Positions 1 through 63,282 of a stretch of DNA of 64,000 bases are shown one piece after another; within the stretch, counting starts at the first letter, position 1; each line of letters opens with the position of its first letter. Both the position numbers and the translations under genes were made by a program. The DNA comes from Haplodiscus bocki (Eukaryota): assembly GCA_965655095.1 (NCBI GenBank), contig OZ296657.1, forward strand, positions 20,770,001-20,834,000. The letters run 5' to 3'. The notes under the pieces are model-generated. The model saw only the letters and a list, made by a program, of their open reading frames with translations. It did not search any database and was not told the origin of the DNA.

Positions 1-2073
1 GCCTCCATTCTTCATAAACGCCAGAGCAAATGGCTTGAGATAAATAAGGGCAGTGACTTCGCCCACATGGCTGCTTTTGCCAGGCATCGCGTTACTGAAA
101 AAACACTGGCATTCGGGAACGCTCTAAAAAAGAAAGTGACAGTAATTTACCTGAACTTGTTCGAAGCATTCAAAAGTGTAAAGATAATTGCATAATTATT
201 GAGGCGCTGGAAGAATGTAACTGTCCTCTGTGGATAATCGAGCTGATGAAGTCAAGGTATGCGGGATGCAAGACAACGCCAGTGAGTGTTGAAGAACTCG
301 CAGGACCAGCACCAGTCACCCGCGGTGTCGAGCAGGGTTGCTCATTGAGCGGACTTTTGTTCAATCTTAATGCGGACACGCTACTCAATGAAGCAACGTC
401 AATTAAATCAGTACATCTAGGATATCTGGACGATTCGGCCATCATCATGCAAGACAAAAAGGAAGTGCAAGAAATTATCAGCAGGACATTAGAATTAGCA
501 GAATCCTGGTTTTTCTTTCAATGCAAAAAAAGCGTGGAGTAGCAAAAGTGAGCTCTATGACTTTGGACATTGACGGAACATCCATCCCTGTGGTCCAAGA
601 CGATAGAGCATACAAGTACCTTGGTATAGAAGCGTTCCCCTCGACAATCCAAGGACTGGATTCGTGTTTCGACAAAACTTTCCTCATGGCTGAACTAATT
701 GAATTCTCAGAGTTGACCCCAATGCAAAAGCTGCATGCACTGCGAACAAAGATTTACCCAATGCTGTTCCACTTGCTTCAGAACTCTAACAGCACAATGA
801 CCCAACTGGAGAAGATGAATCGACAATTTCGGAGAATGGCCAAATGACTACTGTTCCTACCCGAAAGGGCTGCCACGGCATACTTGCATCTTCATCGCAT
901 GTATGGGCATCCCGGTCTGCCAGATCTAGTTCTCGCTAAAAGCAAGATGACTCTCCAAACTTTCATCCGAAGCCTCAATACAACAGAACCATTTGGCGAA
1001 TACCTGAAGCGCGTGTTACTCGACGACAAACATTGCAAGAAACTATAGACGCAATCAACAGTGGTAACGTGAGAGGGTATGGTGACACAATCAAGGAAAC
1101 AGCCAGAGGCTTACGAAGACTAGCAAAGTACCTGGACACAGATGTCGAACTGACCATGCTGGAGGACAATGTCACGCTTTCTATTGAAGACGCCAAGTAC
1201 CGAGACCCTTGGCCTGTTCTTACTCGATACCTCCAGAAGCAGAGTTTAAAAGAAAGACAACGGGCGCCGAATCAAGGACGATTGTGGAGGACTTTGGCCG
1301 AAACACCGCAAACAACTACAGCAGTCTTCAACTTTCACACAACACTCTGTGACTTTAGATTCATCCACCGTGCAAGGCTAAATCTATTCCCTGTAAAATC
1401 AAACTTGGTGCGGAATCAACCTCCTGAAAATCAGAACTGCCGTCGATGCCAAGCTGACTGTGAGACCCTAAATCATACTGCAGCGTGATGAGAAAGAAAA
1501 TCATTGAACGGCACAACTACGTCCGAGACCTTCGAGCCGCCCAGTTTCCTCATCGGCTAAGAATTGTGAAGGAGCAACGTTTTGGAAACATGCAACCAGA
1601 CATCAATGTGCAGGACGAACAGACCAAAGAAGCTGCCATCATCGACATCAAAGTATCTGCTGAATCTAAAGAAACTTTCCAATGGAATGCTCAGCAGATG
1701 GAAGTGAAATATGAGAACTTGAAACGAGCCTATGAAGTCAGTGGATTTTCAACCTCAATCACCACAATCCAGCTGGGTACGCTGGGCAGTTTTTCGAGAT
1801 CCTCAAATCCTGTGCTCCAGAAGTTCATCCGCAACAAGAAGGACATCACAACGTTTATTCGCAAAGCCGCAAGTCTTGTCATCCGCCAATCCCGAAACAT
1901 CTCCACAGAACATCTGACAGGAATTCCCCAAACCTATTAATCAAACTTTTTTTCCGACAAAACCTCAAACCCATTTTTCTCGACATTTACTTTGTAAATG
2001 TATGATTAAACCAGTGTTTTAAGGAAAAATTAGCTCATAAATTTTGTTTTATTCATGCTAATTCAAATGTTTC
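1..2073 (+). mobile_element. Utopia-like (R2/NeSL-type RLE) non-LTR retrotransposon, 3' half, frameshifted
   Basis: RT motifs GVEQGCSLS, GYLDD, YKYLG, LTPMQKLHALR; RLE motifs RARLNL, CRRC..ETLNH, RHN, QPDI..IIDIKV..KYE; 3' end abuts U2 nt 38 at 2074. Confidence 0.9.
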
Positions 2074-2223
2074 ATCTGTTCTCGTCAGCTGAATATCTGG
2101 CATGGTAGGCACCGCCTACCTCCAATATTTAACTGATTTTTGATCCACGGTCTAGGCAAAAAAGCTTGCTTTAGCCGGCCCCGGATTGTCCCGGTCTTAC
2201 ACTCCCACCGGATACGGTCCAAT
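2074..2223 (+). ncRNA. U2: U2 snRNA, 3' part (nt ~38-187), disrupted
   Basis: ATCTGTTCT start, stem IIa GTCAG..CTGGC, stem IIb GGTAGGC-ACC-GCCTACC, Sm site ATTTTTG, stem III with GCTTGC, stem IV CCGGT..ACCGG; colinear with canonical U2. Confidence 0.92.
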
Positions 2224-3123: not shown

Positions 3124-3142
3124 ATCGCTTCTCGGCCTTTTG
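3124..3142 (+). ncRNA. U2: U2 snRNA 5' end (nt 1-19); nt 6-19 form the left TSD of the Tx1 insertion
   Basis: ATCGCTTCTCGGCCTTTTG is the canonical U2 5' end. Confidence 0.9.
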
Positions 3143-7698: not shown

Positions 7699-7796
7699 AC
7701 AAAAACTTTGCTTAGTATAAATATGGGTGCTTACATTTATGTTTATCGAACACAGTTAACAAATTATGAGAAATAAGGTAATTTAAATATTTGAAT

Positions 7797-7825
7797 TTCT
7801 CGGACTTTTGGCTAAGATCATGTGT
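7797..7825 (+). ncRNA. U2: U2 nt 6-34 fragment between a Tx1 3' end and a Utopia 5' end
   Basis: TTCTCGGACTTTTGGCTAAGATCATGTGT. Confidence 0.88.
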
Positions 7826-10800: not shown

Positions 10801-11494
10801 AAGATATCCACATCTTCAATGATACCTCCCGATTCATAGCTGACAAATATGAACCCCTGAGGCGTTCCTATGAAATTTATGGCCACAGAGCTTCAACACA
10901 CACCCTCCAGTTTGATGCCCTTGGCAGTGTTTCTCGCGACAGCTACAACCTCATCAACCGAATCACGAACAAAAAGAATGCATAACTTGTTCTGAGGAAA
11001 ATAACCAACCTAATCACACACTGTACCCGCAACCTCACAGGGCAACATCAACTATCCTGAACTAAAAGCTGATGACGCGCTCTCTGCCAAATCCACGATT
11101 GTGCTAATAATCAATTTTTATGCCATTGTTTCATTATGCCTATTGTTTTACAATGTCAATCTATCTATTCATTTACGCAACTCGCATTCTCCAAAGGTCC
11201 ATATTATTCTTCAACATGTACCCGCCTCATTCCCACAACGAAGCCCCTGTAGCCAAGCAGCGTCATCTTTGGAACGCTCGACCTCCTGCTGGTGTTGGAC
11301 CAGATGGGCTTGGATGGAGGTGGCCCACCAGACTTATAACTGACTACAAACTTGACTTAAACTCCGTAAACATTCACCTAACCTTTACACTGCTTGTATA
11401 AACTTAGCTCTCACATTCTGTATACTAATTTTTCATCATTGTCTCAAGCAACAATTGCGCGTGTATTTTCCATTTCCTTCTAACTAAAATATTT
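7826..11494 (+). mobile_element. Utopia-like RLE element, near full length and degenerate (ORF ~7960-11070)
   Basis: N-terminal zinc fingers (CAAC..RHSKIC, FECSF, YPCGRC..ALSSHTRQC), SAPGPDGW, FRPI, GYMDD, LTPMQKLHALR, AARL, RLE region; U2 fragments on both sides. Confidence 0.9.
11281..11330 (+). other. conserved pseudoknot-type RNA element in the Utopia 3' UTR
   Basis: Crossing stems ACCTCC/GGAGGT and GATGGGC/GCCCA(T/C)C; homologs at 13500-13548 and 20205-20254. Confidence 0.62.
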
Positions 11495-11530
11495 TATATT
11501 CTCGTCAGCTTAACATCTGACATGGTAAGC
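11495..11530 (+). ncRNA. U2: U2 fragment nt ~39-74
   Basis: TTCTCGTCAGCTTAACATCTGACATGGTAAGC, then a deletion junction into Tx1 ORF1. Confidence 0.75.
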
Positions 11531-13497: not shown

Positions 13498-13713
13498 AGA
13501 CCTCCAGTCGGTATTGGACCAGATGGGCTTGGATAGAGGTGGCCCATCAGACTTAAAAATGACTATTGAACATGACTTGAGTCTGAAAACATTCTCTTAA
13601 CTTTCAGACTGTTTGCATAAACTTAATTGTTACATTCAGTATAATAATTTTTCATCATTGTTTCAAGTGACAATTACGCGTATAATTTATTCTATTTTAA
13701 ATTAAATATTTAT
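13498..13713 (+). mobile_element. Utopia-like 3' UTR fragment
   Basis: Homologous to 11280-11494 and ends at U2 nt 39. Confidence 0.8.
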
Positions 13714-18662: not shown

Positions 18663-20404
18663 AAAAAAAATGAATAAGATCAGCAATGTTCACCAGAGGT
18701 TCCTGGATGGTGTCCATGGAATTTGTGGCACCCAAAAAGTGCCCTCTTCTTGGAAAACATACAATACTTTACTCCTATTCAAAAAGCCTAAAGACTACAA
18801 CCCCGGTGAAGAAGAAATACTGAAAAAATTCCGCCCTATTGCTCCATCGAATGTGGGGTACAAAGTTTTTGCGTCCATGCTAGGAACTCGCCTGATCAAA
18901 TGGTTGCAGCTCAACAATGGGGTACAATGGTCCCAAAGAGCCATATTCAACCACAATGGTGTACGGGACAACACTTTAGTTAATGCAGCAATACAAACGA
19001 ATCAGAAAGTTGTATTCTTTGATTTATCTGATGCATTCAATAGTGTCAATCATGAGTTATTGATTGAAGGCCTCAGCAAAATAGGTGCCCAAATTGGATT
19101 GTCGAAACTATTCGAGAGTTATATCTTCAATGCTCTACTACTCCTGTTTCTATGCAAAAGCAACAACTCTCCAGCCCAATCTTCATCAACAGCAGAGTCA
19201 AGCAAGGGTACCCAATGTCATCAACACTTTTTAATTTTTATATCAGCCCCATACTAGCGATGGTACATCAACTTGGCGCTACGTGTCTTGGCTATATGGA
19301 CGACCTAGCGGTAATCATCCCCAAGAATCTTGACGTGCAGTTCATACTCGATGAAGTCACACGGGTAGCTGATGCTCTAAAAATGTCATTCAACATCAAG
19401 AAATGCGGCATCATCAATCAAGAAAAACCAACAACCTTGAAGTCAGAAACGATTCCTCAAATAACATCCAGATGTTCCTACCAATATCTAGGTGCAAGTG
19501 CGGCCGACAAGAAGTTAGAAGGACTCATGGAATCGTTTGAAAAGTTCAAAAATGACTGCCAAACTGTTCTTAACAGCGCCCTTACTCCAATGCAAAAACT
19601 GAATTCTTTGAGAACCCACCTCCTCCCTAAACTCTACCACCTGGTTGAGAACACTTCTCCAAAACAGTCTACACTTCGGAAGATAAATTCTTTCCTTCGG
19701 AAGATAACTAAAACGCTGTGCTTCCTACCTGAAAAAGCGACAAACTCTTATGTTCACCTAAGTAGACTCCACGGTGGTCCTGGAATTCCTGATATGGTCT
19801 GGTTAACACGCACCAAAATCTTGGTCGCTTTTTTCCAAACAATGAACAATGACCAGAACTTTACGAGCGCCTTCTGTGACCTCGTCCATTGTGAAAACTT
19901 GGTTGATCAGATACATATCCGGCATGATTGTCCACCTTTAAAGAAAAAAAGTTACAGGCCATATCATAGGAACTCAACAAACTTTCTGAGAATAGCTTTG
20001 AGCTCATAACAAAAATTCAAACACTCATGATATGTTTTTGTTGTTCCTTCTATTTTTACTCCCCCTTAATTTTCTATTTTTTTTTCACAGTTTGCTTCGA
20101 GACATGTGTACGTACACTTATATTACTTTTAGTCAAAAGGTCCACACACAAGCAACAAGTTCTGATCGTAACCAAGCAAAAATGTAATTCTGTGGTTTAA
20201 ACGTCCTCCTGCTGGAATTGGACCTGATGGGAATTGGATGGAGGTGTCCCATCAACAAACTATTCTTAATCTCTTTTAACTAGAACATTCTTTGACTCTA
20301 TGCTTTTTACTAGTTGTAAATACATCATTTATTAATTTATAACCAACAATATGAAGCTCTTTTACCCGTATATTTTGTTTTGTTATACCTAATTTAAATA
20401 TTCC
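18663..20404 (+). mobile_element. 5'-truncated Utopia-like element (RLE part deleted), flanked by both halves of one U2 gene
   Basis: FRPIA, FFDLSDAFNSV, VKQG.PMS, GYMDD, LTPMQKL, HGGPGIPD; U2 nt 1-31 on the left and nt 38+ on the right, no TSD. Confidence 0.88.
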
Positions 20405-20555: not shown

Positions 20556-23253
20556 CGACCATTTTGGATTCAATATCTCCTCAACTGGACCTGCACAGTG
20601 GTCCTTGAATTTGGAATATTGAGTGTGTTGAGTGATGCTAAGCATTTTTGTTGAATTGTTTGATGAAGTTCGTTTTTGGGTTTTCGTGTTTGCAGTATAG
20701 CTGATTATTTTGTTTCTCATCTTTTTCTTCCAGTATCGCCCATATTCGACTCAACCAGAAGTCTTTTTCAGGCTTGAGGACTCCTCTTGGCGAATAAGAA
20801 GTGTGCATTAGTCAAAGGTTGCATACGTTGTCTTTTGCGACGTTTGCTTTTACGGTATTTTCAACGGTTTATCGTTGAGTAACTTTCCACCATGGTCCAA
20901 AAGTTGCTCATTGGCATTTCAATTCTGCTTATTTGCTTTTCAATTCTGCTTAATGGATTTTATTATTGCAATGGTTGAAGATACTTCCTAGTCGATCTTA
21001 TATTGATCTTAATTAACTCATCTCAGGTTACTTTGCCAAAACGCGTTAAAAACAATGCCTTTGCCCGAAAGCAGAGAAGAAGTACAGGTTCTTAGGATTC
21101 CTGTACCTCTTCGCGCTGCAGATTTTCAGTCAAGAGAAGATTTAGATTTGGCTTTCAGAAAAGGGTGTTCTCCGATTTTGAAGCGGGCACCGAATTTTTG
21201 CCAAAATGAAGTGACTTTGTCAAAAACTTTTAATGCATTAGGAGGAAGGAACATTCATACAATAACTGTTGTTGCATCGTCCGATGCAAGACCCTATTTT
21301 GATGAAATTAGAACAAGAGGCATTAAGCTTCTCGGTAAAATAGTTTTCCCTTTGGGGCATAGTGCATTTATAAGTAGCAATCGGCATAATATATATCCAC
21401 GAAAAGTGAACATCAAAATTCAGAACCTCCCCATCATCTGCTCGGACGATGAAGCAATGAAGTTATTTAGTTTTCCACCTGAAATTGAAAATATAGATGA
21501 AATTGATCGAAGAAAAGAAAATGTTGAAGGTGTAGATTTCTACATCAGAGAAGCGCAAGTCAAAGTCGGTGTGCGCAATGAGAAACAGTTGAAAAACCTT
21601 ACTCTGTGGTCATATGACAAGAGAACCAAAAATGAACCAACCCTTTTGAACGGAAAACCTGTGTCTTTTCACGCTCCGTCGTTGCATAAGTGCGAAGAGT
21701 ACAAGAAAACTAGGCAATTTCAGGGCCACCACAAAAACTGGTGCTTCCTACAAGATCTTTCGAAGCACTATTTGACAGAATAAAGTGTTCTTGCGATGCC
21801 ACTCAATTATCTGTTAAAGTTGATAAAACAAAAATTCTGAGCAGAAGAAGCATGCAATATTATGAAACTCGAAAGAAAATCAAAATACTCGGTATTGAAC
21901 AAAAATTGAATGATCAGGCAAATAAGGACCTCTTTCAGGAAAAAATCTCAGAAGTTCAAAACTCGGTTGCAGCGATATCCAAAAGGATAATTTCAATGCG
22001 GGCAAAAGCAATAAATTTCGAAACTTTCATTTACTCCAAGTTGATTTACGTGTTACGCCACACAAAAGTGGTAACACAGCGATTCGAAAGATTCCAAAGG
22101 TATATAACAAAAGGTATATGGATGGAGAAGAGAACAGCAGTGGCTTCAGACATTCTGTCTCCCCACACACAGCGGCGGAATTGGTCTCCCAAAAATTGAC
22201 CTGAAAACTTTTGCAGCCGTCATTAGTGACTGGAAAAATACATTCTTCAACTCAAATCTAGGAAAAGAAATTCTGCTGAATCAACTCTTCGGATCTGAGG
22301 AAGGGTTTCTCCATGACCTTAAGAAATCTTTTTGAAAAGTTTGAAATGAAAATTGATATCTAGGGAGAACAAATTCTGTTGATGGGTGACGGGAGACAAT
22401 TGCAAAATGTGGAGCGTACGAAAACGAAAGAGATTTATCTTTTTCCTCTAATTACGGAAAAAAAACGAAAAGTAGAAAACCGCCTGGCTCCATCTTGCAG
22501 GATTTTCGACGTTCCTGCACAACAACTTCTATCTTTTAAAAAGTTCCTTTGGTAGGCTTCTTCAATGTATCCACATGAAGAGAATCTAATGTATCGAGTT
22601 CTCTAGACTTCTTGCTCAGACAAGCCAAAAATGAAGCAATTAAATTTAATTCAAGATGATAACTGTACTTTTTGTAAACGTGTGCAAGAAACGACAGAAC
22701 ATATACTTTTCGATTGCCAAATTTTGGATAATCTCCGCAAAGAAAACAAACTAAAACATTGGAAAAACATTTTTGTTGACAAAAACTCCATGTCAAAACA
22801 TTTTGCCACGAACGTTTTGATTGGAGCGTGGAAAAACGAAAGTGAAAAAACGATGGACTATCTTAATAAAAACATATCCAGATGGAGCCGGGCAAACACC
22901 AAAATTGGATGAAATCTACACAGAAAAAATAATTGGTTTGGTACAAGAGAAAAATGGAAGATGGAAAGGAAGTATAAAGGTAGGGAATAGGTATTTCTGG
23001 AGAGTTCAACCCCGTTCTTTTTAATAGCATATTTAATATATATTTAAAACCGATTAGAATTTCATGCAACCAAGTTGACGGAAAATCAATTGTGAAACCA
23101 AGTAATGCCGGATGGTGCGGTGGTCCCCGTATCCGCCGTCTTGCGTCGAATGCTGCCTTCTCCGCGGGTGGATACGGGGACCCTAAAAAACTTTTCGGGA
23201 CCCGGGCCTTGTAATGGGTGACTAATGTAACGTGATGTAATGTGAAAGATTGG

Positions 23254-23365
23254 AACTAATGGTGATATATTGCAACTAATGGTGAAATATTGCAACTAAT
23301 GGTGAAAGATAGCAACTAATGGTGAAATATTGCAACTAATGGTGAAATATTGCAACTAATGGTGC
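23254..23365 (+). repeat. 20-bp tandem repeat AACTAATGGTGAAATATTGC (~5.5 units)
   Basis: Direct reading; same array at ~41707-41818; only about 2 units at ~7326-7355. Confidence 0.9.
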
Positions 23366-23438
23366 TTTTCGTTTTGTTTTTTTCTTTCTTTTTTTTATCA
23401 AAATAAATAATGGCTCCGGGAACCAAGTGGAAGAGACG

Positions 23439-23807
23439 CAGGGGCTGATGATCAAACTCAGGTCTTGGGGACGAGCCAGCAACTACAATTTCAAGGTTCT
23501 GGACACTGTGTCTAAGATGGACACTGACTGGCGATTCCAGTCGAGCATTTGAGAAACAGGACTCAGTTGGAATTCCATATCTGGCCTCAAACACCTGTCT
23601 CGAACTTCGTCTACAGAGCCACCCGCCTCATGCAATGCAATCACCACCGTGCAACAGATCTTCCACCTTTCAAAGATTAGACGCCGTTGCTGGGATTCGA
23701 ACCCCCTACCTTGAAATCGGAGACTCAGGCGTTGACCATTATACCAACATTTCATAAAAACGTAGAAAGCTGAATGTAACTCGTAATGGTTTATGCATCA
23801 GCCCCTG
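23439..23807 (-). mobile_element. IR-flanked antisense tRNA-derived cassette (copy 2)
   Basis: CAGGGGCTGATG / CATCAGCCCCTG ends; tRNA-like head 23682-23753 with TGGTATAATGG and GGTTCGAATCC. Confidence 0.75.
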
Positions 23808-23894
23808 ACAAAACCTTTGCATAATTTATGGGTGCTTAAAAGTTTATTGACAAATTATGGAACAAAAAACTCAAGTTAATTTAAATATTCGAAA

Positions 23895-23907
23895 TTCTCG
23901 ACCTTTT
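23895..23907 (+). ncRNA. U2: U2 nt 6-18 remnant
   Basis: TTCTCGACCTTTT, then joined through a T-run to spacer DNA. Confidence 0.65.
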
Positions 23908-27929: not shown

Positions 27930-30900
27930 TGATGTCTGACCAGAAATTAATTGTAATTTTTCTCTATAACCGATATAAGACCTTTAACCTCTGATAGGCT
28001 TTCGGCTAACTTTGTACCTAGGTAAATTTTAATTAGAACATCTTCATCATTAGAGGGTTTGAAGTTTGTTGTTATCTTTTCATCTTTCATGCAAAATTCG
28101 GTAACCTTAAGTTTTAATTGGTTATGATTTATATCCTGTAGTCTATCTTTTGCAGACTCAATATTATAAAACTCACTTCTCCATAATTTACCGTAACTTG
28201 TATATCCCATTGTTTAGTTAATTTAATTTGCTTAAATAGCCTTTCCTTCATTTCTGTCATAAATATAGCTGCCTTTCCATCATCATTTATCTGTTTCATC
28301 TCTTTAGACAGGCTTGCTTTTGATTCTTACAGCCAATTCTCTTCGTAGGATCCTATTTTATTTTTCAAAGTCTCAGTTTCAGTACAAAATTTCCCTATAT
28401 CCAATTAAATCAAAAGCTTTTTAAATAGAGGGCATCATGGAAACTAATTGCTCCCTTTTCTAGGCTTGTGTTTTACGGATTAAAAACTGAACTTTTCTAT
28501 ATCTTGAAGTGTATTACTCCTTACAGTTTTGTCATTTGACAACTTGCATTGCCAATTCTAATATTTATTACTATTTATTTTGAAAGATTTCATGTAAATA
28601 TGCTTCGTATATTACGTTAATACCTAGATTTCCACCTGCTTTATTTGAGTCCTTTGGGAGCTAACCACCAAACTACAAGATTTTGGGTGCAAATGAGGTC
28701 TTTTGATGCCATTATTATCTGCTTTGACTCTACGAGTTTGAGGTTGTTGGGGTCCAAAGGACCCATCGGGGTCTCTACGGGACAGTTGAGAGCAACTATT
28801 CATGTTTACGATAGCTCTATAACGTTTTTTTTTGGGAATGAGAATAAACTAAACCTTTTGCCAATTGTTTTCGTCTTAATTTTGGGTTGATGGATTTAAT
28901 CTCCAAAAACCGAGACATTAAATCTGATTTAACTTCGCGTATAATTAAATTAGCGTCAATATTTCGTGTTTTAGATATTTGCTTTAAAGAAAAAGTATTA
29001 TTCATTCAGGTAATTATATAGAAAAAAAACAAACGAAGATAAAATTAAAAATGAAACTAATTATTTTGAAGTATGTATTTTTTTCTTTATAATATTATCA
29101 GAAGATCCAACAAATCTTTCAAGTAAATTTGTTTAAATGTTCATTGATTTAGAGAGTAGAAAGTTAGAAACAACATACATTTTGATGGTTATACATGGAT
29201 TACTATTTCACAGAAGATTATCATGGAAAAAGATTTCTATTTAAAATGAATAAGTTAAAACTTTCCATTATTAGAATAGACATTAGGGATAAAGTATGAG
29301 AAGCGTTGAGTATTTTTATACGTTAAAGTTGATTATATGAAATGACTGAAAATTCGGGCGCTAAGGTTGCTAACAAATGGAATGGGGATTCTATTTTATT
29401 TGGTTTACGAGATAAACATGTGTTTGTTGGGGATTCTGTAAACTGTTTCGAAACCCCTGGGGATAAATTCATAAAATTCAGTTCTAATCTCGGAAGAAAA
29501 ATCTACCTCATCCTGTTGCGTATGGTGAAAAAATTATATGAATTACATGATAAAAAATCAATTTGTACCATATGATTCTGAGCAAGACGAAAACATCCGC
29601 AAAAATATTTGTGACATGGATGTATCATATGAGTGTTATAGATTCTTGTATGATAGGTCCTGAGGACCGATTGTGAGAAAAAAAGGAGATTAGCTCCAAG
29701 ACAATATTAGCTGAAAGGTTTTCAGAGAGCATTGATTATGGTATTGATAAGGAAAGCGAGGATGTTATTGATGATGAAGACATAGAGGAAATGAAATTTT
29801 GTAATGGTACGAATGAAATAGTAAACACTTCTAATCAGAGATGTGTTGTTTAGAGAAAGATAGTGTTTATGCTTTCCGTCAATGTGGTCATCAGTGTTTA
29901 TGTGAGAGTTTTTATCACTCCAATAAAAAGAGAACATAAGTATAATCGTGAGAAAAAAATCTAAGTTTGAAGCCCAAGGAATCCGACTCAAATAAGATTA
30001 ATGCTTACATATCTAGTCAAGGACCATATCGTGATCCATAATATCCCGTTACTTTATCGAAAATATATTCCCCATAGTTTGATAGATGAAAAAGGATTGG
30101 TGAAAAAAAGAAACATATGATGCAAAGCAGTATATTTATATAAAGAGGTTACTTTGACAAAGGTTTTGAGGATGATGAAAAAGAACATGAAAAGTATAAT
30201 GAAAACTTCCTAAATTATGAATAAAAACCTGGACGCTTCGATGATGTGTGTATCGAGTATATTTCTCAAACTCGCTTTGAATGCATTCGATGAAAAACAC
30301 CGATACTTAAAGAATGATCGTAAAAAAAACGATTAAGTAAAAGAGAATAGAAAATTAGACCAGTTGGTTTTCATTTCAATTCAAAAGCATTCATTTTTCA
30401 GTAAGTCTCTAGCTTGTATAAAAGTTCAGTAACGTGCTTTTCAAATGGCTGCTAAACAAAATCTTTTATCGAATGCAAATAAAGAGTTCGTACTTTGGGG
30501 AAGAAAAATGAAGCAACAACTGCAGTAAAATTGGGGCAGTTGTCTGACAATTCTCAGAAAACCCTGACTAAATTCCTTGACTATCTTTATGTGATTGAAT
30601 TCCTGCGGGAAGAAGATGAAAGCCCATAAAAAGAAAACAATAAGGAGCCAGCAACCAAAGAGGACATGTTCAAAACTGAAATCTTACCAAGCATTAAACG
30701 ACAAGTTGATATAAATCGATCTTCAACAAAAATGGATGATTTCAGTCCGGAATTGATGGAAAATTTCCATTCCTTTCACAAACTCCGAAATGGTGGGATC
30801 ATAAGTCCATCTGTTGAGAAAAAGTTGGGCTATTCGGAGAAATTGAATCATTAACTCAACGTTTACTTCTGATGATAACACCTGACAAAGAATTTATGTT

Positions 30901-31709: not shown

Positions 31710-34673
31710 GGTGTTCTATTCCAATTGCAGTCACAGAAACCACGACAATTGACATCGCAATTGTGGCATCCGTGTTCAGGAGGCACGGAAAACTTGACAA
31801 TGCCCTTTCAAGGAAAGGAAATACGGAAACCTCTAACCTAGAAAACTCAGCTCCAGGCCCTGATGGCTGGAAAAACGATATGCTTTCTCGTGAGAAAGAT
31901 TTCACGAAGGAGTTCGATGAAGACCTGCACCAAATTGCTTCATCCTCCATTACAACCGACTGCTGGAGGTCCTACAACTCAATTATGTTGAATAAGAAAC
32001 CAGGGGTCTATGTGCCGCAAGAGGAAACAGTGTTCAAAAATTTCCTAACGACGGGTCTCTCCAGCACACCTAACAAACTGGTGTCAGCAACATTATGTTA
32101 GATACTAACAAGTGGCGGGAAAAAAGTAGAGGCATCTCCACCACTCAACGTGCAATTTTGCTCTCGCCATGAGTGGAAAAAAACAGCTTGGTTGTTGCTC
32201 AAGCGTTAAAATAGCAAATATGTGTGCTGTTTCTGGATTTGTCGGAAACTGAGAAACATAGAGCACAGTTACACATACGAGGTTCTACGACAATGTGATT
32301 GCCCAATATGGATCATCAAGATGATAAAATCCCTGTACATTGGATGCCCTACAGTGCCTGTGGAGCAGGGCGGCAATGAATCTCAGGCCCTGTACCAGTC
32401 TCGACAGGGGTTCGTCAAAGTTGCCAGCTGAGTGGTCTACTTTTGAAGCTGGCCTAGGACTCAAACGTTCAAAAAGCTTTAAATTCTGACTCTACCTGCT
32501 TGGGATAAATGGACGACCTGGCTGTCAATGCAGACTCCTCGACTCTCTCTTCAGTGTTGGAAGAGATAGTCTCACTTGCAACCTGTCTTTGATAATCCTT
32601 CAATCTTAAGAAGTGAGTGGCCAACTATGCAGCAAGTATCATGATTGCCGGAGAAAAAAACTTTGAAAGCGAAGCTGGAGCACCCAATCTGGTAGGATTA
32701 GCTGCCCGATTTGACAAAACGTGGAAATTACCTGAACTGATTGTCAGCTCTAATACCAATGCAGAAACTACATGCCCTTCGTATATAAGTCCTACCCTAA
32801 TTGATGCACCTCCTGAAAAAAGCTCAATCGACACAGAAAACAATACAGAGGATCAACTGATGCCTACCGAAAATGGTAAGAAAAAGCTGTGGTCTACCTG
32901 AAAGATCATCGAATCATTACATCTACCTCCATCGAAATTATGGATGCCCTGGTATGCCGAACCTTGATCAAATCATTGTATAAAGGCTGCAAAACGACAC
33001 CAATTGACGTGAGTGGTACAGAACTAGCTGGACCAATACCTGAGGCTCGAGGAGTAAAGCAGGGTTGCCCCTGAATGCGCTTATGTTCAATTTAGTGCTA
33101 GAGTCAGTCCTGAAGAGAGCCACTACGAACAGCTCGATGTGTGTGTGTTGGCTAAACGGACGATTTGGCGATTGTGGTAGACAACGCATCATGTGTGAAG
33201 GACATCGTACAGAATGAGGATAGTATGACAAGGAGACTGGGGATGAAAATCAATGCCAGCAAATGTGGAGTGGCCAATTACGATGACACAATCATGATTG
33301 ATGGAGTAATTGTGCCCGCGGTAACTGAAGAAAGGGCGTACAAATACCTTGGGACCGAGGCGCTGCCAAGAAAGATGAAAGGCATTGATGATTGTTTCAA
33401 GAAAGCATGGCGTGTGGCCGAGCTGATTGAATTTCCTGAGATTACGCCGATGTAAAAAGCCTTGCGACGCTGCTGTTCCTACCAGAAAGAGCAGCAAACG
33501 CCTATCTGCATCTTCAGAGAATCTGCGGTGGAACAGGTATACCAGATCTGATCTTAACCAAGAGCAAGCTGGCATTGAAGACAGTGGTGACAATGCTGAA
33601 CCTTGAGGGAGAATTCGGTGACTACTGCAAGAAACTGATTTCTGGAGCACTACCCTCGGAGTCGATCATGAACCTCATCAATGAGATCAAGACAGTTGGA
33701 TGCAGCAATACCGTTAAGAAAGCAACACGGGCACTGAAAAAGATCAGCCAGGATTTGGGATTGCCTGTGAAACTGGAACTCTGCGAAGACCAAGTAACTC
33801 TGTCAATCAATGGCACGGTGTTCAGGAACCCGTGGCCGATGTTGAACAAAAATATGCAAAAGCAAAGTCTGAAACAACTCCAAAATGCACCCAACCAAGG
33901 ACGTTTTTGGAACACTCTGTCAACAACTCCACTAACGACGGAGAACATCTACAGTTTCCACACAATGATGTGCGACTGGAGATTTGTGGACAGAGCCCGT
34001 CTGAATCTAATACCAGTAAGAGCAAACTTCTTGTGGCATCAAGGAAACGATAACTGCAGAAGATGTCAAGGAGCTCGAGAAACCCTGAGTTACACGATTA
34101 ACAACTGCAGTGTGCACCGGCGGAAGATCATAAGAAGACACAATGAAAAACGAGACTGAGTCGATGCTATGGCGCCCAGTAACTACCGAGTTGGAAAAGA
34201 ACAGCGATTTAGTAACCTTCAACCCGACCTGATCCTGCAAGATGATATGAACCAGACAGCCCACATCGCCGAGGTCATTATCTCAGCAGAGAGCAGTGAA
34301 ACCACGACCTCATTGCCTCAAAATATGAGCCCCTAAGACGTGCCTACACAATCGAAGGATACGCTGCCCAACTCCACACGATTCAGTTAGGTTGTCTTGT
34401 AGGAATCGCACGAAGTAAAATGAGCAGTCTCTGGACCATCTTCAGAAATAAACGGACTATCTCAACATTTGCACGAAGAGCGTCACAGATGACAATTCAC
34501 CACTCCCGCAACTTGTCAGTCGAACATCTAACTGGCTCCCCCCAAAAGTTTTGAAAATTGTTCACAAATTCTTCTAGTCGACATTATTGTAAATAATTTT
34601 TCTATTATCTTTCTTTGTTTGAAGTGACATTTCCGAGTATAATTTGTTTTATTCATGCTAATTCAAAAATTTA
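31710..34673 (+). mobile_element. chimera of two Utopia-like families (junction ~32965), ending at U2 nt 38
   Basis: SAPGPDGW..; RT motifs occur twice (second LIKSLYKGCK..GVKQGCP); RARLNL, CRRC, RHN, QPDL. Confidence 0.85.
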
Positions 34674-34741
34674 ATCTGTTCTTGTCAGTTTAATATCTGG
34701 CATGGCAGGCACCGCCTACCTCCAATATTAAACTGGTTTTG
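34674..34741 (+). ncRNA. U2: U2 nt 38-~105, ending in the left TSD at the Sm site
   Basis: ATCTGTTCTTGTCAG...CCAATATTAAACTGGTTTTG. Confidence 0.9.
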
Positions 34742-36195
34742 CTTGGAAATTGGACCAAAATAGCCACCGAGGTACAGCAGTTCACTGTGCCATATATAAA
34801 GCCTACTCGGGCATTATTCATGAAAGACTGAAAGTGTGGTCAGAATTTTATAGCAATTTACCTGCGACCCAACATGGCTTTAGGAGTGGTTTTTCGACGT
34901 TTACAGCGATACAGACCCTGTACGACACCATAAAGGAGGCCATTGTGTTCAAACCATACTTTGTTTGCTTCGTCGACTTCGAAAAAGCCTTTGATAGCAT
35001 AAATCGAACGAGTCTCCTCTCCAAACTTAGAAGTCTCGGAGTATCCCATCACTTCGTAAAAGTGATTTTCTCGATGATAGATAGAAACAGCATCTCGTTA
35101 TCCACTGGAAAATATCTACAGGAACCGATCACTCAAACAGTGGGGTTAGCACAGGGGGACAAACTATCCCCGTTACTGTTTGCTATTTCTCCTATGATCC
35201 TTTCCTATGCTGATGACCTTGCAATTGGTACCACAGACTTATCTTCTTTACAAGAATACCTCAATACCTTATATAAATATTGCAAGATGAATCACCTCTC
35301 CGTGAATGTTAAGAAAACTAAGATTATGACATTTTGTAAATGTAGAGGACTCAAAAAAACCCAACATCTGCTATGGAAAAGAGCCAATCGAATTAGTTAA
35401 CGAATTCGTTTATTTGGGTGTCAAATTCCAAACAAACTTGAAACCAACAAAACACTTGAAACACCTGGTGACCAAAGCTGTAATTGCTACAAATATTCTT
35501 AACACCATGTTAGATTTGAATCAAATTTCTCTGATTAGTGCTACTCGACTTTTCAATACTGTTAGTATTCCTGCTGCAACATATGGTCATCATATCTTCA
35601 AAGATTTATTCTCTGCAGAAGTTTGGAACAATCACAAACGACAAATTTACAGCATATTTTTCAAAAGACGGGCGGCCATACCAAGACGATTGCCGACGAT
35701 GCCGCTGATTGAGAAATTTTTGGCCCCGATCCTTTGAAAGTAGCTGAAAGACAGCCAAGAACCTGAACCATTATAGCTATGTATTATAGCAATGGATGCC
35801 ACCTCAGGTTATGTGTCAATGGAAATTGTTTTTCTTCTTTTAATCAAGGGAGACTGCCCTGTCAGTGTATCTTTTGCCTTGATGAGATCTGTGATAATGG
35901 CCATGAATGTTGCTGTCCTGCCCTTCACGGAGTCACAATTCTAGAATAAAAGAAATTGGTTTATGGCCATTGTGTACCATCAATCAATCGAGAACCAGAA
36001 ACAAAGTTATAAAATAACAGAATGCATTGTGACGAATCGGACTCCAGCTTGTGAATTTGCTATATATAATTCGCTTTCTTAATTTTATTTTTATTTATTT
36101 CTCTGGAATACGTGATGAAGCATTTGTGACCACTATTATCACCATTTCTCTTTATATTCCATTTGTCAAAGATTGACGTTGAATTCAATATTTCG
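34742..36195 (+). mobile_element. 5'-truncated non-LTR element of a third clade (RTE-X/CR1-group-like RT) inserted at the U2 Sm site
   Basis: QHGFRSGFST, FVDFEKAFDSINR, GLAQGDKLSPLLF, YADDL, VNVKKTKIM, FVYLGVKF, Cys-rich C-terminus; TSD TTAAACTG(G/A)TTTT(T)G at 34728-34741 and 36196-36210. Confidence 0.85.
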
Positions 36196-43454: not shown

Positions 43455-43854
43455 CAGTCAAGCATTTGAGTGAGAGGACTCAGTTGGAATTCCATATCTG
43501 GCCTCAAACCCTTGTCTCAACCTTCCTCTACAGAGCCACCCGCCTCATGCATTGCAATCACCACCGTGCAACAGATCTTCCACCTTAAAGTTTTGTCGCA
43601 GTTGCTGGGATTCGAACCCTCTACCTTGACAACAGCCACTCATGCTATGACCACTATACCATCATTGTACAAATGCGTGGCAATCTGAATGTATATCCGA
43701 ATAGCGTATGCATCAGTCCCTGGCAAAAACAGTATAAATCTGAGTGCTTACTTATATGTTTCAGTTAACAAATTATGTGTATGTTTTTAAGTTAACAAAT
43801 TATGTATATGTTTCAGTTAACAAATAATGAGAAAGGTAATTTAAATATTTGAAA
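43455..43854 (+). mobile_element. Tx1 3' end with antisense tRNA-like head (43597-43668), right IR and ~25-bp triplication
   Basis: Homologous to 7500-7796; ends GGTAATTTAAATATTTGAAA at U2 nt 6. Confidence 0.85.
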
Positions 43855-51831: not shown

Positions 51832-51832
51832 G

Positions 51833-53780: not shown

Positions 53781-54626
53781 ATGGAACCGTACAACAGACA
53801 AACGGCCAGTAGTTTCGTCGGAAGGGCCCCTATTTCGGAGACAACTACCTCTGGGGTGATGTATAGCCAGGCCCCCGAAGAAGCTCGAATGGCCAACATG
53901 CCGGCTACCGCGGGGATATTACCTCTGACAATAAGAGCAGGGAACCCCCAGAGCACATATCGCCTGAACAAGATCGAAACACCCCGTCCCAACACGGAGT
54001 ATGTGTATTTTCATTTGGAAAAATATTGTACACTAGACGCATTGTGGTCCCCGCAATGGTTAAAGTTGAGTATCTACTGTGCAATGACGAGGGAAATTTT
54101 AATGGCTGTCATCAACGCAGCAATGGAACGACCGGAACGAACCCATTTCCTTCTTACTCTCACCCGAGTCCTGGCTCTACCGGATTTGGCCCCGCGTGCA
54201 GAAGGAAATCCACTTAGTACGCGGTTTCATTGGAAAACACCCATGCACGAGGTTATGTGGTCTTGACTGCAAACAGGAGAATCGCCATGGGATTTTCCTT
54301 ATCAGATGTATCCCCAGCCACCGGCCCGACCCCGAGTGGACATCGCGACTTTCCAACGGGCGATGTTTACACATTTGCTACCATCGACATCCGCGACACC
54401 GGCGGCGACGACTGCTACCCCCACCCCGTCGACTGCAACAAGCGCGGAAACGGCAATTCAGGAGCTGGGAGTTAACGTTGACGTAGAAAAAGACACCGAT
54501 AGCGTGGATACAACTGCCGCAGTGATTTTCACTCCCCCGAGGGTAGTCAAGAAAGATATTAAACGACCAGTACCGATATCTCCTCCTGGAACGAAGAAGA
54601 ACCAGCCCGGTACCTCGGCATTGTAA
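53781..54626 (+). pseudogene. ~280-codon ORF of unknown function upstream of the PPT, one internal TGA
   Basis: ORFs 53781-54266 and 54306-54626 are in the same frame; P/T-rich C-terminus; 5' part duplicated at 59593-59858. Confidence 0.55.
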
Positions 54627-57900: not shown

Positions 57901-58030
57901 CCCGTCTCGTGCATCTGGTACACGCGCTTAATGGAGTAGTAGTGGAGCATTTTAAAAACAGAGTAGAAAAACTCCTCAGTGATTCGATTCCTCTTTGGCG
58001 GTTGTTAAAGCTACTTTTCAAAATTCTACA
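54943..58030 (+). mobile_element. long terminal repeat, copy 2 (3088 bp), with PPT before and PBS after
   Basis: Same termini as copy 1; few substitutions and a ~29-bp indel. Confidence 0.85.
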
Positions 58031-60146: not shown

Positions 60147-60296
60147 AAACTATGGTGAACATGCAGTGCTGTTTTTTTGCTTTATTCGAAAAACAAAAGC
60201 GCTAATTTCATTTACAAATATGTGAAAAATTATGATGTAGAATAACGGAAATTAATTTGAATATCAGAAATTCTCAGCTTTTTGGGTAAGATCATG
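60147..60296 (+). other. diverged Tx1-type 3' end plus U2 nt 6-31 (60271-60296)
   Basis: AAATTATG...TAATTTGAATATCAGAAA|TTCTCAGCTTTTTGGGTAAGATCATG. Confidence 0.7.
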
Positions 60297-63282
60297 CCTC
60301 ACTCCAGTTCGGGCCAACGCCGTTAGTATGGCCGCAAAGGCCCGAAGTAGCCATACTCGCCAATGTCATGGCAGCGTAGCCAACCCAACCACCAACACTC
60401 TACCTTTTGTACCCACATTCAACACGGACACTTTCCAGGCGCCACGCTCAGTTGATGCAGATGTAGCCACACCTTCAGCTTCCCCCACCCGACAACGTAA
60501 CGTCGACCATGTACGGTGCGACAATCAATACTCGCCAATATCAACGGCCAACCTCCCCAGTTCGACTGCTGACGATTATCCAATGACTGTTTAAGACCCA
60601 ACTCCTGATGTGAATGAAGTCATTGCTGCCCCAATTCTGACGAAACCCGCGCCAGCAAAACAGGACGGTCTGAAGTCCTTGTTCCGTCTAACTCCTACAA
60701 AAACTTCACAGCTCTAACCCCAAACGCGCGCTAGACAAAATACAGATGTTGCCAACGATCAACTGCGAAGTTGACCCTGTGGACCTCCGTTACGAGCTGC
60801 TTCAACAACTCGAGTCAAAAGGCACACAGGTCCCGCACAAAGTACTCTGGTCCAGATGCAGAGATGATGTGGAAGTACTCTCCGCACCCTTTACTGACGC
60901 TGAAGTCAAGGAAGCCCTGAAGCACCCGGATAAGGCGCCCGGACCTGATTGCTGAAAGTACAGAGAGCTAGCACAGATGGACGACTTCGTGCCAAAATTC
61001 ACAGAGCTCCAGCACTTGATTACTAGCAGAGGAGAAATACCAAACTGCTGGAGGGTGTACAACACAATGCTCCGGTTCAAGAAGCCAGAAGAATATGGAC
61101 CTGAGAAAGAGAAAGTATTAAAGAACTTTCGCCTGATCGCCTTGTCGAACGTGGCATACAAGACCATGGCAGCTAATTTGTGTCGAAGGCTGGGAAAATG
61201 GTTGGAACAGAATAAGGGGAATAGAAAAGGTATTCACAGAGGTCAGTGTTTTCAAGAAGAGGTGTCCAAGAAAACACCCTCTCAGTAGCAGAGGCTTTAC
61301 GTGCCAAGAAGCCTGTTGTATACCTTGACCTCAGCGACGCCTTCAACACTGTAGAATATCCGTTGATACACGCAGCCCTCCAACAGTCATGATGCCCAGG
61401 ATGGATACTGGAGATCGTGCAGTCAGTGTACATCAACTGCATCACAACCCCTGTGGATCTGTCTGGGAAGCCTCTCGACGGTCCTGTTCCTGTATCATGC
61501 GGTGTACGACAAGGCTGCCCCCTGAGCAGTCTGATTTTCAGCCTGGTACTAGATCTGGTGCTCCAAGCAGCCTCGGGGGCCAGGAACAATCTGTCTCGGG
61601 TATATGGACGACATCGCCATTATTTTCGACAACCCTGATGACGTCACAAACACCCTTGACCGCACAGTCAAAGCTGCACAGTCACTTGGTTTCTTTTTCA
61701 ATATATCCAAGTGTGGAATCACTAACTACAAGGGTGCTGTCGCAATCAACAACACAGCGCTACCACGTGTCACCGATGATGATAGAGCGTACAAATACTT
61801 TGGAACGGAAACCTCCACCAGCACCGTTGGCGGACAAGATATTTGTTTACAGAAGACATGGGAACTGGCGGAGAAGACTGAAACATCAGATCTTACGCCT
61901 ATGCAGAAACTCCATGCTGTACGAACCAACGTCTTGCCAATGATGTACCACCTGGTCGAAAACTCATACACAACACAAGACAGACTGTACGGCATCAACA
62001 GAAGACTCAGGAAGCTGACCAAACGGCTGTGCTGCCTTCCGGAAAGAGCAGCAAATGCCTACATTCAATTAGACTGAATGTATGGGGGACCGGGCATTCC
62101 AGATTTTGTTGTATGAAAGCGAGATTGACTTTGCAAACCTTCATCCCAGCAATCAATCTGGGCGATGAATTCGGTGAAAAAGTGCGTACCCTAATCCAGA
62201 AGAATCTCAGCTCGTCCGAATTGATACAGAAGATCAACAGCGGCTCCAAGTCTGGTCTGTCACTACTTGGAAAAGAAGTGAGCATGGCGATAACACGAAT
62301 TGAAAAGTACCTGGGCTGTGACTTGAGACTTGACTTACACGAATCAGAAAGCTTTGTCTTGTACATTAACAACATGATGTACAAAGACCCAAACCCTACC
62401 CTAAATCTGCTGATACGAAAACAAGGCCTGAAAAACCTATGTAATGCCACGAATCAAGGACGCTTCTGGAAATCGCTAAGCAAAAAAACTATAGCTACCA
62501 AACTGGTCTACAGTTTCCACACAAAGATGTGCGACTAGAGACATGCACATTCAGCAAGACTAAATCTGACCTCACTGAAAGGAAGCTTCAATTGGAGTAC
62601 TAGACGTAACGAGGCATGCAGATGTCAGACAGGACGAGAAATTTTAAATCATGTACTGAATAACTGCCCTGTTCAGAGACGTGACATAATTCAACGGCAT
62701 AACAACATCAGGGACACTCTTATACACAAGCTTCCAAAAGACCCCAAAATTTTTCGAGAGGAACGTTTTGGCAACCTCCAAGCAGACATGATTGTGGAAG
62801 ATTCCATGAAGAATGAAGCATACATACTGGACGTCAAAATCTCATCTGAAGACACCAACCTTTTCGCGGAGAATGAGCATCGGATGAAAGAGAAATACGA
62901 GCCCCTACGACGAGCATATGAACTCAGAGGCACAAGGGCGACAACGTCAACAATACAGCTTGGCTGCCTCGGTTCCATATCAAGGTCCACAAGCGAAACA
63001 CTTCTGAGACTTCTCGGGAACAGAAGAGAAACCAGACGCCTTATGGTCCAGCTTTCCTGTCAGGCCTCGCATGCAGCTCGTAACCTGATGGTTCACTTTC
63101 TCAGTGGTCAAAAACAAAACATGTGAAGCTAATGAAGACAGAACTCAACAGTTCTCCTCAAACTCAAATTTAACCGTATTCCCGTGTTTCTTTCTAATCA
63201 ATTTATTCTTCTACTTCCACCAATATATTGAATTGACAATTCCACGTATAATTTATCTTATTTATGCCAATTTAAACACTTC
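60297..63282 (+). mobile_element. 5'-truncated Utopia-like element flanked by both U2 halves
   Basis: SSHTRQC, APGPD, YLDLSDAF, GVRQGCPLS, YMDD, LTPMQKLH, ARLNL, RHN, ILDVKI..KYEPLRRAY. Confidence 0.9.

What the first reader, a model, noticed from the sequence alone, without database searches (positions are those of the whole stretch)
2055..63282. One shared 3'-terminal motif (AATTYAA(A)TATT) ends all three unrelated element types, with no poly(A)
Seen just before U2 resumes. Tx1: TAATTTAAATATTTGAA (7779, 43837), TAATTTAAATATTCGAA (23877), TAATTTGAATATCAGAA (60253). Utopia: TAATTCAAATGTTTC (2059), AAATTAAATATTT (13699), TAATTTAAATATTCC (20390), TAATTCAAAAATTT (34659), CAATTTAAACACTTC (63268). 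Third clade: GAATTCAATATTTCG (36181). The motif is absent from the native U2 upstream sequence. Inference: convergence on a host signal, for example a variant poly(A)/cleavage signal placed so that the RNA ends 10-25 nt inside the flanking U2 and carries target-complementary sequence for target-primed reverse transcription. Exchange of 3' tails between families is an alternative.
Basis: partly seen in the sequence, partly recalled or inferred. Interest (0 to 1): 0.75.

Follow-up and report, generated by a model that had tools for sequence, protein, structure and literature searches.

The report
Shared 3' end of three retrotransposons
Three unrelated jumping-gene lineages in a decayed U2 snRNA gene array all end in the same ~14-letter A/T-rich block with no poly(A) tail; the block is real, conserved across species, and marks the exact last letters of every copy, which points to a shared start site for reverse transcription rather than a poly(A) signal.

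Summary
AATTYAAATATTT with at most 1 mismatch occurs 8 times on the + strand (0.44 expected). Seven hits lie exactly at Tx1 or Utopia 3' ends abutting U2; the eighth ends a Utopia-like region.

The third element's match is its own tail, not a U2 duplication: a copy outside U2 (L009) ends identically.

The three lineages are distinct:
- Tx1 resembles L1 ORF2p.
- Utopia has an R2-like C-terminus.
- The third is APE-bearing and resembles neither.

Similarity between lineages is confined to the last ~14 nt (0 of 20,000 shuffles reach it). Within each lineage this block is among the best-kept parts of the 3' UTR, in other host species too.

Tx1 RNA does run into U2: an ectopic copy with a sequenced empty site carries U2 nt 6-14. 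Ectopic copies also carry U2 heads and land at TYCT sites. A poly(A)-type signal is not supported: there is no consistent hexamer and no A tail, and Tx1 and Utopia copies end at a fixed nucleotide.

Best reading: a short terminal module where target-primed reverse transcription starts, shared through tail capture or a common host factor. No RNA data were available.

The parts
7779..7796 (+). Tx1 3' terminal block TAATTTAAATATTTGAAT; U2 nt 6-34 follows at 7797-7826
23877..23894 (+). Tx1 3' terminal block TAATTTAAATATTCGAAA of the ectopic copy
23895..23903 (+). U2 nt 6-14 (TTCTCGACC) carried along by the ectopic Tx1 copy (3' transduction); the spacer resumes at 23904
   Evidence: The empty-site joint 20861->23904 with 19-20 replaced letters has depth in the thousands. 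Alignment with intact spacers agrees.
20862..23903 (+). Tx1 copy inserted in the U2 spacer, not in U2
43837..43854 (+). Tx1 3' terminal block TAATTTAAATATTTGAAA; U2 nt 6-29 follows at 43855-43878
60253..60270 (+). Diverged Tx1-type terminal block TAATTTGAATATCAGAAA; U2 nt 6-30 follows. Assigned to Tx1 only by its tail and insertion site.
2058..2073 (+). Utopia terminal block CTAATTCAAATGTTTC; U2 nt 38 onward starts at 2074
11480..11497 (+). Utopia terminal block (CTAACTAAAATATTTTAT) followed by only 32 nt of U2 (11499-11530)
13697..13713 (+). Utopia terminal block TTAAATTAAATATTTAT; U2 starts at 13714
20388..20404 (+). Utopia terminal block CCTAATTTAAATATTCC; U2 nt 38 onward starts at 20405
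34658..34673 (+). Utopia terminal block CTAATTCAAAAATTTA; U2 nt 38-104 at 34674-34740
63267..63282 (+). Utopia terminal block CCAATTTAAACACTTC; U2 starts at 63283
28552..28568 (+). Probable further Utopia-type tail (CCAATTCTAATATTTAT) at the end of a Utopia-like coding region, with no recognisable U2 behind it
36165..36177 (+). Third-clade 3' hairpin GTCAA-AGA-TTGAC, one base upstream of the terminal block
   Evidence: Folding. Relatives in another host have TCTC-AAT/ATT-GAGA at the same place.
36179..36194 (+). Third-clade terminal block TTGAATTCAATATTTC; U2 resumes at 36196
   Evidence: The tail is identical in the copy outside U2, L009 8589-8604.
34741..36195 (+). 5'-truncated third-clade element (RT open reading frame 34750-35400) inside U2
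3124..3142 (+). Native U2 nt 1-19 with its upstream spacer, then the Tx1 5' end. With 7797 onward this gives the 14-bp target-site duplication (nt 6-19).

Best explanation
The block AATTYAA(A)TATTT, with 1-5 further bases, is the extreme 3' end of three distinct non-LTR retrotransposon lineages:
- an L1-like Tx1 family with an AP-type endonuclease, which inserts at U2 nt 5/6;
- R2-like Utopia elements, which insert at U2 nt 37/38;
- a third, dispersed, AP-endonuclease-bearing lineage.

It most likely works as the cis-acting terminal module at which target-primed reverse transcription starts, that is, a 'stringent-type' LINE 3' tail.

SHOWN
- In Tx1 and Utopia the block marks the same last nucleotide in every copy examined; the third clade's four copies also share one end point, though its exact position is not confirmed by a target-site duplication.
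- It is among the best conserved parts of the 3' UTR.
- It is predicted to be single-stranded.
- For Tx1, the RNA starts at U2 +1 (transcribed together with U2) and reads at least 9-13 nt into the downstream U2.

INFERRED
- The U2 read-through pairs with the nicked target, and cDNA synthesis then enters the element through the block.
- The block is bound by the element's own protein or by a common host factor.
- Three lineages carry it because a short terminal module was captured or exchanged, for example by 3' transduction or template switching among elements that share the same arrays. It was then kept by selection in each lineage.
For: ENRICHMENT AND POSITION
- 8 hits against 0.44 expected, all at element ends.
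- In 134 kb of related contigs, every 13-mer hit at 1 mismatch or fewer on the elements' sense strand is again at these termini. The only other hits are one minus-strand near-match in L004 and two exact 12-mer hits in L003.

THREE DISTINCT LINEAGES
- RT identity between families is 22-29% or undetectable.
- Tx1 matches L1 ORF2p at 1e-60 and has an AP-endonuclease hit.
- A Utopia C-terminal protein matches the C-terminal endonuclease region of R2 proteins.
- The third lineage matches both only weakly. Its relatives carry Exo_endo_phos_2.

CONSERVATION
- Tx1: the terminal 19 nt have 0.89 mean pairwise identity, against 0.47 for the 45 columns upstream. This is across 8 copies, including one from another species whose ORF is 60% identical in amino acids.
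- Utopia: 0.77 against 0.62 across 10 copies whose proteins are 30-60% identical.
- Third lineage: relatives 42-44% identical in amino acids, from another host, end GTTGAATTCACATATTAT and have a compensated hairpin.

END POINT OUTSIDE U2
- Tx1 copies in L006, L007 and L008 end precisely at ...TATTTGAAA, followed directly by 13-bp target-site duplications.
- The third-lineage copy in L009 diverges from the window's flank right after ...AATATTTC.

READ-THROUGH AND TRANSCRIPTION WITH U2
- Empty site plus transduced U2 nt 6-14.
- U2 nt 1-13, 10-15 or 12-19 at the 5' ends of ectopic copies, and targets that start TYCT.

SIMILARITY LIMITED TO THE BLOCK
- The similarity between families is confined to the block and is not due to chance.
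Against: - No RNA data exist for this organism in the run index. Transcript ends and the start point of cDNA synthesis are inferred from DNA copies only.
- An RT-recognition tail is normally specific to a family. No known mechanism makes an R2-like protein and two L1-like or other proteins prefer the same 14 nt. This favours a host factor or a role in RNA processing, which I cannot exclude.
- Only the third lineage has the hairpin typical of stringent-type tails.
- Utopia tails published for ants, reptiles and sea urchin contain AATAAA about 8-12 nt from the end (PMC4640811, S1 Fig). This keeps a processing-signal reading alive.
- The Tx1-to-third similarity alone is weak (p about 0.04).
- For the third lineage no clear target-site duplication was found, so 3' transduction there is not excluded.
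Confidence: 0.5

Rival explanations
1. Host 3'-end processing signal. The block is a lineage-specific variant of a cleavage/polyadenylation signal. It makes the RNA end a short way into the flank, so that the RNA carries target-complementary sequence.
For: - Tx1 RNA does extend into U2.
- Utopia tails of ants, reptiles and sea urchin carry AATAAA at the equivalent place and also lack A tails.
- Two variants of the block here read ATTAAA (13699 in the window; L001 8894).
- A host signal would explain why three protein machineries share the block.
Against: - There is no consistent AAUAAA or AUUAAA.
- No poly(A) is found at any of more than 20 copy ends.
- The three ectopic Tx1 copies run straight from ...GAAA into their target-site duplications, with no carried flank or A tail. 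The third-clade copies also show no A tail.
- Even under this model the RT would have to start internally at a fixed base, which again needs recognition of the block.
Confidence: 0.2
2. Binding site for a common host RNA-binding factor, acting in stability, export or RNP assembly. It was acquired independently (true convergence) and plays no direct part in priming.
For: - The block is predicted to be single-stranded and A/U-rich in all three lineages.
- It is conserved across host species in each lineage.
- It is shared by elements with unrelated proteins.
Against: - The identity spans 13-14 contiguous positions and always lies within 1-5 nt of the terminus. That is more than a typical RNA-binding-protein site needs.
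- The model does not explain why copies end at a fixed nucleotide.
Confidence: 0.15
3. The block is U2-derived sequence: a target-site duplication, a captured flank or a mimic of the target. Alternatively, it is spread among copies by gene conversion within the U2 array.
For: - The Rfam U2 model aligns the Utopia tail to U2 nt 1-37.
- U2 has CAATATT just upstream of the third element's insertion point.
- The U2 3' flank TTGAACTCAATATC resembles the third element's tail (post hoc p = 0.0015).
Against: - The tails do not resemble the upstream target or any part of the U2 unit beyond shuffles (p = 0.08-0.98).
- The third element's tail is identical in a copy outside U2.
- Ectopic Tx1 copies keep the block.
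- Array homogenisation cannot act on a dispersed family, or on two different positions within U2.
Confidence: 0.03
4. Chance resemblance of A/T-rich 3' ends.
For: - The tails are about 80% A+T.
- The Tx1-to-third similarity alone gives p about 0.04.
Against: - The joint shuffle test gives 0 of 20,000.
- The block coincides with the most conserved segment in each lineage.
- All hits at 1 mismatch or fewer are terminal.
Confidence: 0.02

Closest known systems
Utopia (U2 snRNA gene-specific, RLE-encoding non-LTR retrotransposons; Kojima & Jurka 2015, PMC4640811)
   Same: - Insertion just before U2 TCTGTTC (nt 37/38-39), in the U2 orientation, with precise 3' junctions and variable 5' junctions.
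- Several divergent lineages live together in one U2 array.
- R2-like C-terminal region.
- No poly(A).
   Different: - Published tails (ants ...AAAATAAAGTGAGCTAA, reptiles ...CTAATAAAAGTCAA, sea urchin ...TTAATAAA) do not carry AATTYAAATATTT.
- The paper does not discuss 3' tails or any sharing of tails with other clades.
Keno and Tx1-Mar (Tx1 clade; Kojima & Fujiwara 2004, cited from memory and as cited in Kojima 2015, PMC4494074)
   Same: - An L1-like RT with AP endonuclease that targets U2.
- Tx1 relatives that carry U2- or U1-derived heads at their 5' ends are described for crocodilian Tx1-Mar. This matches the U2 heads on the ectopic copies here.
   Different: - Keno shares the Utopia site. 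This family inserts at U2 nt 5/6, with a 14-bp duplication of nt 6-19.
- It has no poly(A), whereas the SINEU partners of Tx1-Mar have poly(A) tails.
- A tail shared with Utopia has not been reported.
Stringent-type LINE 3' tails (eel UnaL2/UnaSINE1; Kajikawa & Okada 2002, from memory and as cited in PMC4494074)
   Same: - A short conserved 3' terminal sequence, with a hairpin in the third lineage, defines where copies end.
- No dependence on poly(A).
- The tail is shared between different elements.
   Different: - The known sharing is between a LINE and its non-autonomous SINE partner, which use the same RT.
- Here three autonomous elements, with unrelated RTs and different endonuclease types, share the terminal 14 nt.
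R1/R2-type use of downstream target sequence on read-through RNA (Eickbush and Fujiwara laboratories; from memory)
   Same: - Transcription together with the host gene.
- RNA that runs into the downstream target.
- Pairing with the nicked target sets a precise 3' junction.
   Different: - Here this is shown only indirectly and only for Tx1.
- The host gene is a Pol II snRNA gene, not rDNA.

Membership tests
Utopia | 3' junction at U2 nt 38/39 (…|(A)TCTGTTCTT.TCAG), same orientation as U2 | tested here: met
   Six junctions in the window and four in L001 and L010.
Utopia | RT followed by a C-terminal zinc finger and a restriction-like endonuclease, with N-terminal zinc fingers and no AP endonuclease | tested here: inconclusive
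   RT is found. There is a weak C2H2 hit in the N-terminal open reading frame. The C-terminal relative P0067 matches R2 residues 965-1074 and 1187-1295 at 2e-5. The catalytic PD..D/ExK residues were not inspected.
Tx1 clade | L1-like RT with an N-terminal AP endonuclease; sequence-specific insertion with a target-site duplication | tested here: met
   L1 ORF2p match at 1e-60. Exo_endo_phos hits. 14-bp duplication of U2 nt 6-19. Clade placement by RT phylogeny was not done.
Keno (Tx1 clade, U2-specific) | Insertion at the same U2 site as Utopia (nt 38/39) | tested here: not met
   All four junctions in the window, and the one in L001, resume at U2 nt 6.
Cleavage/polyadenylation signal | AAUAAA or AUUAAA hexamer 10-30 nt upstream of the RNA end | tested here: not met
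   The consensus blocks lack it. Only two single-base variants read ATTAAA.
Cleavage/polyadenylation signal | Poly(A) tail or carried flank on retrotransposed copies | tested here: not met
   No A-run at any copy end. The three ectopic Tx1 copies run from ...GAAA straight into their target-site duplications. The third-clade copies have no A tail, but their target-site duplications are unclear.
Cleavage/polyadenylation signal | Transcripts end downstream of the signal | not testable with these tools
   No RNA run holds this sequence.
Stringent-type LINE 3' tail | Terminal sequence conserved within the family far above the rest of the 3' UTR | tested here: met
   Tx1 0.89 against 0.47; Utopia 0.77 against 0.62. 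Third lineage conserved across 42-44% amino-acid divergence.
Stringent-type LINE 3' tail | Conserved stem-loop next to the terminal sequence | tested here: inconclusive
   Present with compensatory changes in the third lineage only. No conserved hairpin in Tx1 or Utopia.
Stringent-type LINE 3' tail | The tail is required for recognition by the element's own RT | not testable with these tools
   This needs a retrotransposition assay or an in vitro target-primed reverse-transcription assay.

The most novel reading that the evidence does not exclude
In this host lineage a single 13-14-nt single-stranded A/U-rich RNA element replaces the poly(A) tail as the 3'-terminal identity mark for retrotransposition. 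It is read by one common (host) factor, and three lineages with unrelated reverse transcriptases and two different endonuclease types depend on it. This would be a host-specific '3' end code' for LINEs. The element has either spread horizontally between the lineages or evolved in each of them.
Probability: 0.25. Interest if true: 0.8.

Novelty: new variant of a known kind. Interest (0 to 1): 0.62.

Why it matters
LINE 3' tails are thought to be private to a family and to the SINEs that parasitise it, because the family's own RT reads them. Here a terminal block is shared and selectively kept by an R2-like element, an L1-like element and a third lineage. That implies one of two things:
- short 3' modules move between autonomous elements and still work; or
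- a host factor, not the RT, reads the 3' end.

Either would change how initiation of target-primed reverse transcription is understood in elements without poly(A). Either would also be testable with the R2-type and L1-type in vitro systems that now exist.

The data also give sequence-level evidence that a Tx1 element living in U2 is transcribed from U2 +1 and reads into the downstream U2.

Tried and rejected
1. The third element's match as a U2 target-site duplication (CAATATT is U2 sequence just upstream). Rejected: the L009 copy outside U2 has the identical tail.
2. The Utopia tail as diverged U2 nt 20-37, suggested by the Rfam alignment and by eye. Rejected: anchored shuffle tests give p = 0.16-0.98, and free local alignment against the whole U2 unit gives p above 0.05 for all tails.
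3. The Tx1 tail as a mimic of the native sequence upstream of U2. Not significant.
4. A mimic of an snRNA 3' box.
   - The third element's tail resembles the U2 3' flank (post hoc p = 0.0015).
   - The flank is only partly conserved in the L001 species.
   - No other snRNA genes were available to define a 3' box.
   - From textbook knowledge of Integrator, cleavage upstream of a 3' box would remove the block from the RNA.
   - Left as unexplained.
5. Homology between families upstream of the block. None found.
6. RNA evidence. No RNA run holds the sequence, and the four runs laid were contigs of unknown kind.
7. A scan of JGI metagenomes for GAAA plus U2 nt 6-28. No match.
8. More distant Tx1 relatives (L003, L004, L005; 36-38% identical). 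None is flanked by U2, and none has the block on the + strand.
9. A first fuzzy-regex motif scan gave inconsistent counts. It was replaced by an explicit Hamming-distance scan.
10. A search for target-site duplications around the third-lineage copies in L009 and L012. Inconclusive.

Full report
SETTING

The window is a decayed U2 snRNA array. Rfam finds five U2 3' parts, and BLAST finds two further fragments.
- U2 nt 38 onward resumes at 2074, 13714, 20405, 34674 and 63283.
- Native U2 starts, with their upstream spacer, lie at 3124, 18632, 24450 and around 53333 and 59145.
- All retroelement copies are degraded; the longest open reading frame is 497 aa.
- The window has no N runs.

THE THREE ELEMENT TYPES ARE DISTINCT

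Tx1:
- An RT of 497 aa at 39158-40651 and a weak AP-endonuclease hit at 38325-38759.
- Its 811-aa relative P0002 matches human L1 ORF2p at 1e-60.

Utopia:
- RT open reading frames, plus an N-terminal open reading frame with a weak C2H2 hit.
- A relative of its C-terminal open reading frame matches the C-terminal endonuclease region of R2 proteins.
- The many copies are only 30-60% identical in protein, so they are old lineages.

Third element (34741-36195):
- Its RT is 26-29% identical to the Tx1 RT and has no tblastn match to Utopia.
- It matches R2 and L1 structures only weakly.
- Its relatives carry an AP endonuclease.

OBSERVATION

- I add a Utopia tail at 11482-11497 and a probable one at 28554.
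- AATTYAAATATTT with at most 1 mismatch gives 8 + strand hits against 0.44 expected, all at element 3' ends.
- There is no A-run at any junction.

THE THIRD ELEMENT

I first suspected that its match was U2 sequence, because CAATATT lies just upstream in U2.
- A copy 88.7% identical lies in contig L009, outside U2. It has the same tail...GATTGACGTTGAATTCAATATTTC, followed by an unrelated flank. The block therefore belongs to the element.
- This lineage is dispersed, not U2-specific.
- Relatives 42-44% identical in RT, from another host sample (L011, L012), end ...GAGATGTTGAATTCACATATTAT.
- The hairpin GTCAA-AGA-TTGAC (window 36165-36177) is replaced there by TCTC-AAT/ATT-GAGA, which is a compensatory change.

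CONSERVATION IN OTHER GENOMES

L001 comes from a different species; its U2 stem differs. It has:
- a Tx1 relative (60% amino-acid identity) that ends ...TAATTAAAATATTTGAAA|TTCTCGGCC;
- a Utopia that ends ...CCAATTCAAATATTTC|ATCTGTTC.

L010 has the same U2 as the window. It adds three Utopia tails, all ...AATTCAAATATTTC.

Pairwise identity within families:
- Tx1, eight copies: 0.89 in the terminal 19 nt, against 0.47 just upstream.
- Utopia, ten copies: 0.77 against 0.62.

SIMILARITY BETWEEN FAMILIES

- It is confined to the last ~14 nt: Tx1 TAATTTAAATATTT, Utopia TAATTCAAATATTT, third AATTC-AATATTTC.
- Sequence upstream shows no similarity.
- Shuffling the three 25-nt tails never reaches the observed summed score (0 of 20,000).

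WHAT THE RNA LOOKS LIKE (DNA EVIDENCE ONLY)

No RNA run holds this sequence. Four contig runs of one organism were laid on 19000-24100.
- A joint 20861->23904, with 19-20 letters between (TTGCTACTGCAAAACTTTG), has depth in the thousands. This is the empty spacer site.
- The Tx1 copy at 20862-23903 is therefore an ectopic insertion. Its inserted end is ...TATTCGAAA+TTCTCGACC, which is U2 nt 6-14. It joins the spacer at TTTTT, matching U2 nt 15-18.
- The template RNA therefore reached at least nt 14-18 of the downstream U2.
- Three further ectopic copies (L006, L007, L008) end exactly at ...TATTTGAAA and have 13-bp target-site duplications that start TTCT or TCCT.
- The same three copies carry U2 nt 1-13, 12-19 or 10-15 at their 5' ends.
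- So the RNA starts at U2 +1, and a short U2 read-through probably guides the choice of target.
- Tx1 relatives with U2 heads are known from crocodilians (PMC4494074).

WHAT THE BLOCK IS NOT

- Not U2-derived.
- Not a product of array homogenisation. It occurs at two different U2 positions, in ectopic copies and in a dispersed family.
- Not a canonical poly(A) signal. There is no consistent hexamer and no A tail, and Tx1 and Utopia copies end at a fixed nucleotide.
- Published Utopia tails differ from it, but they do contain AATAAA near the end. A role in RNA processing therefore cannot be dismissed.

MOST LIKELY MECHANISM

The block is a terminal cis-module at which first-strand synthesis begins. 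Two lines of evidence support this.
- It is predicted to be unpaired.
- It defines the same end point for all Tx1 and Utopia copies. The third clade's end is consistent with this but is not pinned down by a target-site duplication.

Why three protein machineries share it is unresolved. My reasoning on that is as follows.
- I favour capture or exchange of a short tail for its origin.
- The contiguous 13-14-nt identity, with no flanking homology, fits a terminal swap.
- Its persistence in every lineage across species implies selection.
- That selection may act through a common host factor.

Confidence in the mechanism is moderate (0.5). Confidence that the shared block is real and not chance is high.

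NOVELTY

U2-specific Utopia and Tx1-clade elements, LINE 3' tails and read-through priming are all known. I did not find a terminal block shared by autonomous LINEs of different clades in the papers searched. I rate the finding as a new variant of a known kind.

Noticed in passing
window 20862-23903: A Tx1 copy inserted in the U2 spacer. It replaced about 19 bp (TTGCTACTGCAAAACTTTG). The empty allele dominates in sequencing contigs. The copy carries U2 nt 6-14 at its 3' end.
   Followed up: yes
L007 5831-5870; L006 4404-4430; L008 5712-5735: Ectopic full-length Tx1 copies carry U2 heads (nt 1-13, about 12-19, about 10-15) right after 13-bp target-site duplications that start TCCT or TTCT. L007 has 13 extra letters (ACCCAACAGGGTT) between the duplication and U2 nt 1.
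   Followed up: partly
window 20368-20880 and 23788-24100: Summed contig depth over the U2 3' part and spacer is in the thousands, against about 3-20 for unique flanks. The U2 unit seems to be present in very many copies.
   Followed up: no
window 20560-20580, 36297-36315, 2228-2245: The U2 3' flank ATTTTGAACTCAATATCTCC resembles the third element's tail GTTGAATTCAATATTTC (14/16; post hoc p = 0.0015). It is only partly conserved in the L001 species. Whether it is a 3' box or an old tail remnant is unknown.
   Followed up: partly
window 11271-11530 and 13490-13749: An 80%-identical direct repeat (228 nt of Utopia tail plus U2 nt 38-69) brackets a Tx1 fragment that is truncated at both ends (11544-13489). 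The origin is unclear: recombination or patch repair.
   Followed up: no
window 42956-43452: A Utopia-like RT fragment lies between the body of a Tx1 copy and its terminal 3' UTR.
   Followed up: no
L010 16115-16372: U2 nt 1-36 is followed by a second copy of nt 21-35, then only about 200 nt of Utopia tail before U2 nt 38. This is a strongly 5'-truncated Utopia with a duplicated U2 segment at its 5' junction.
   Followed up: no
window 48724-52029 / 54943-58226 and 52780-54054 / 58593-59866: A recent segmental duplication (97.4% and 99.5% identity). It includes a U2 5' fragment with a 5'-truncated Utopia RT right behind U2 nt 21 or so (53338, 59150).
   Followed up: no
window 2037, 13682, 20370, 36141, 63253: The Rfam U2 hits are reported as covering model positions 1-192. 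In fact the model's first 37 positions are forced onto the Utopia tail, or onto the third element's tail. None of these is an intact U2 gene.
   Followed up: yes
window 20405 (loose end) and 7820-7826: U2 nt 29-37 in this species reads ATGTGTAGT, with T rather than the usual A at nt 30.
   Followed up: partly
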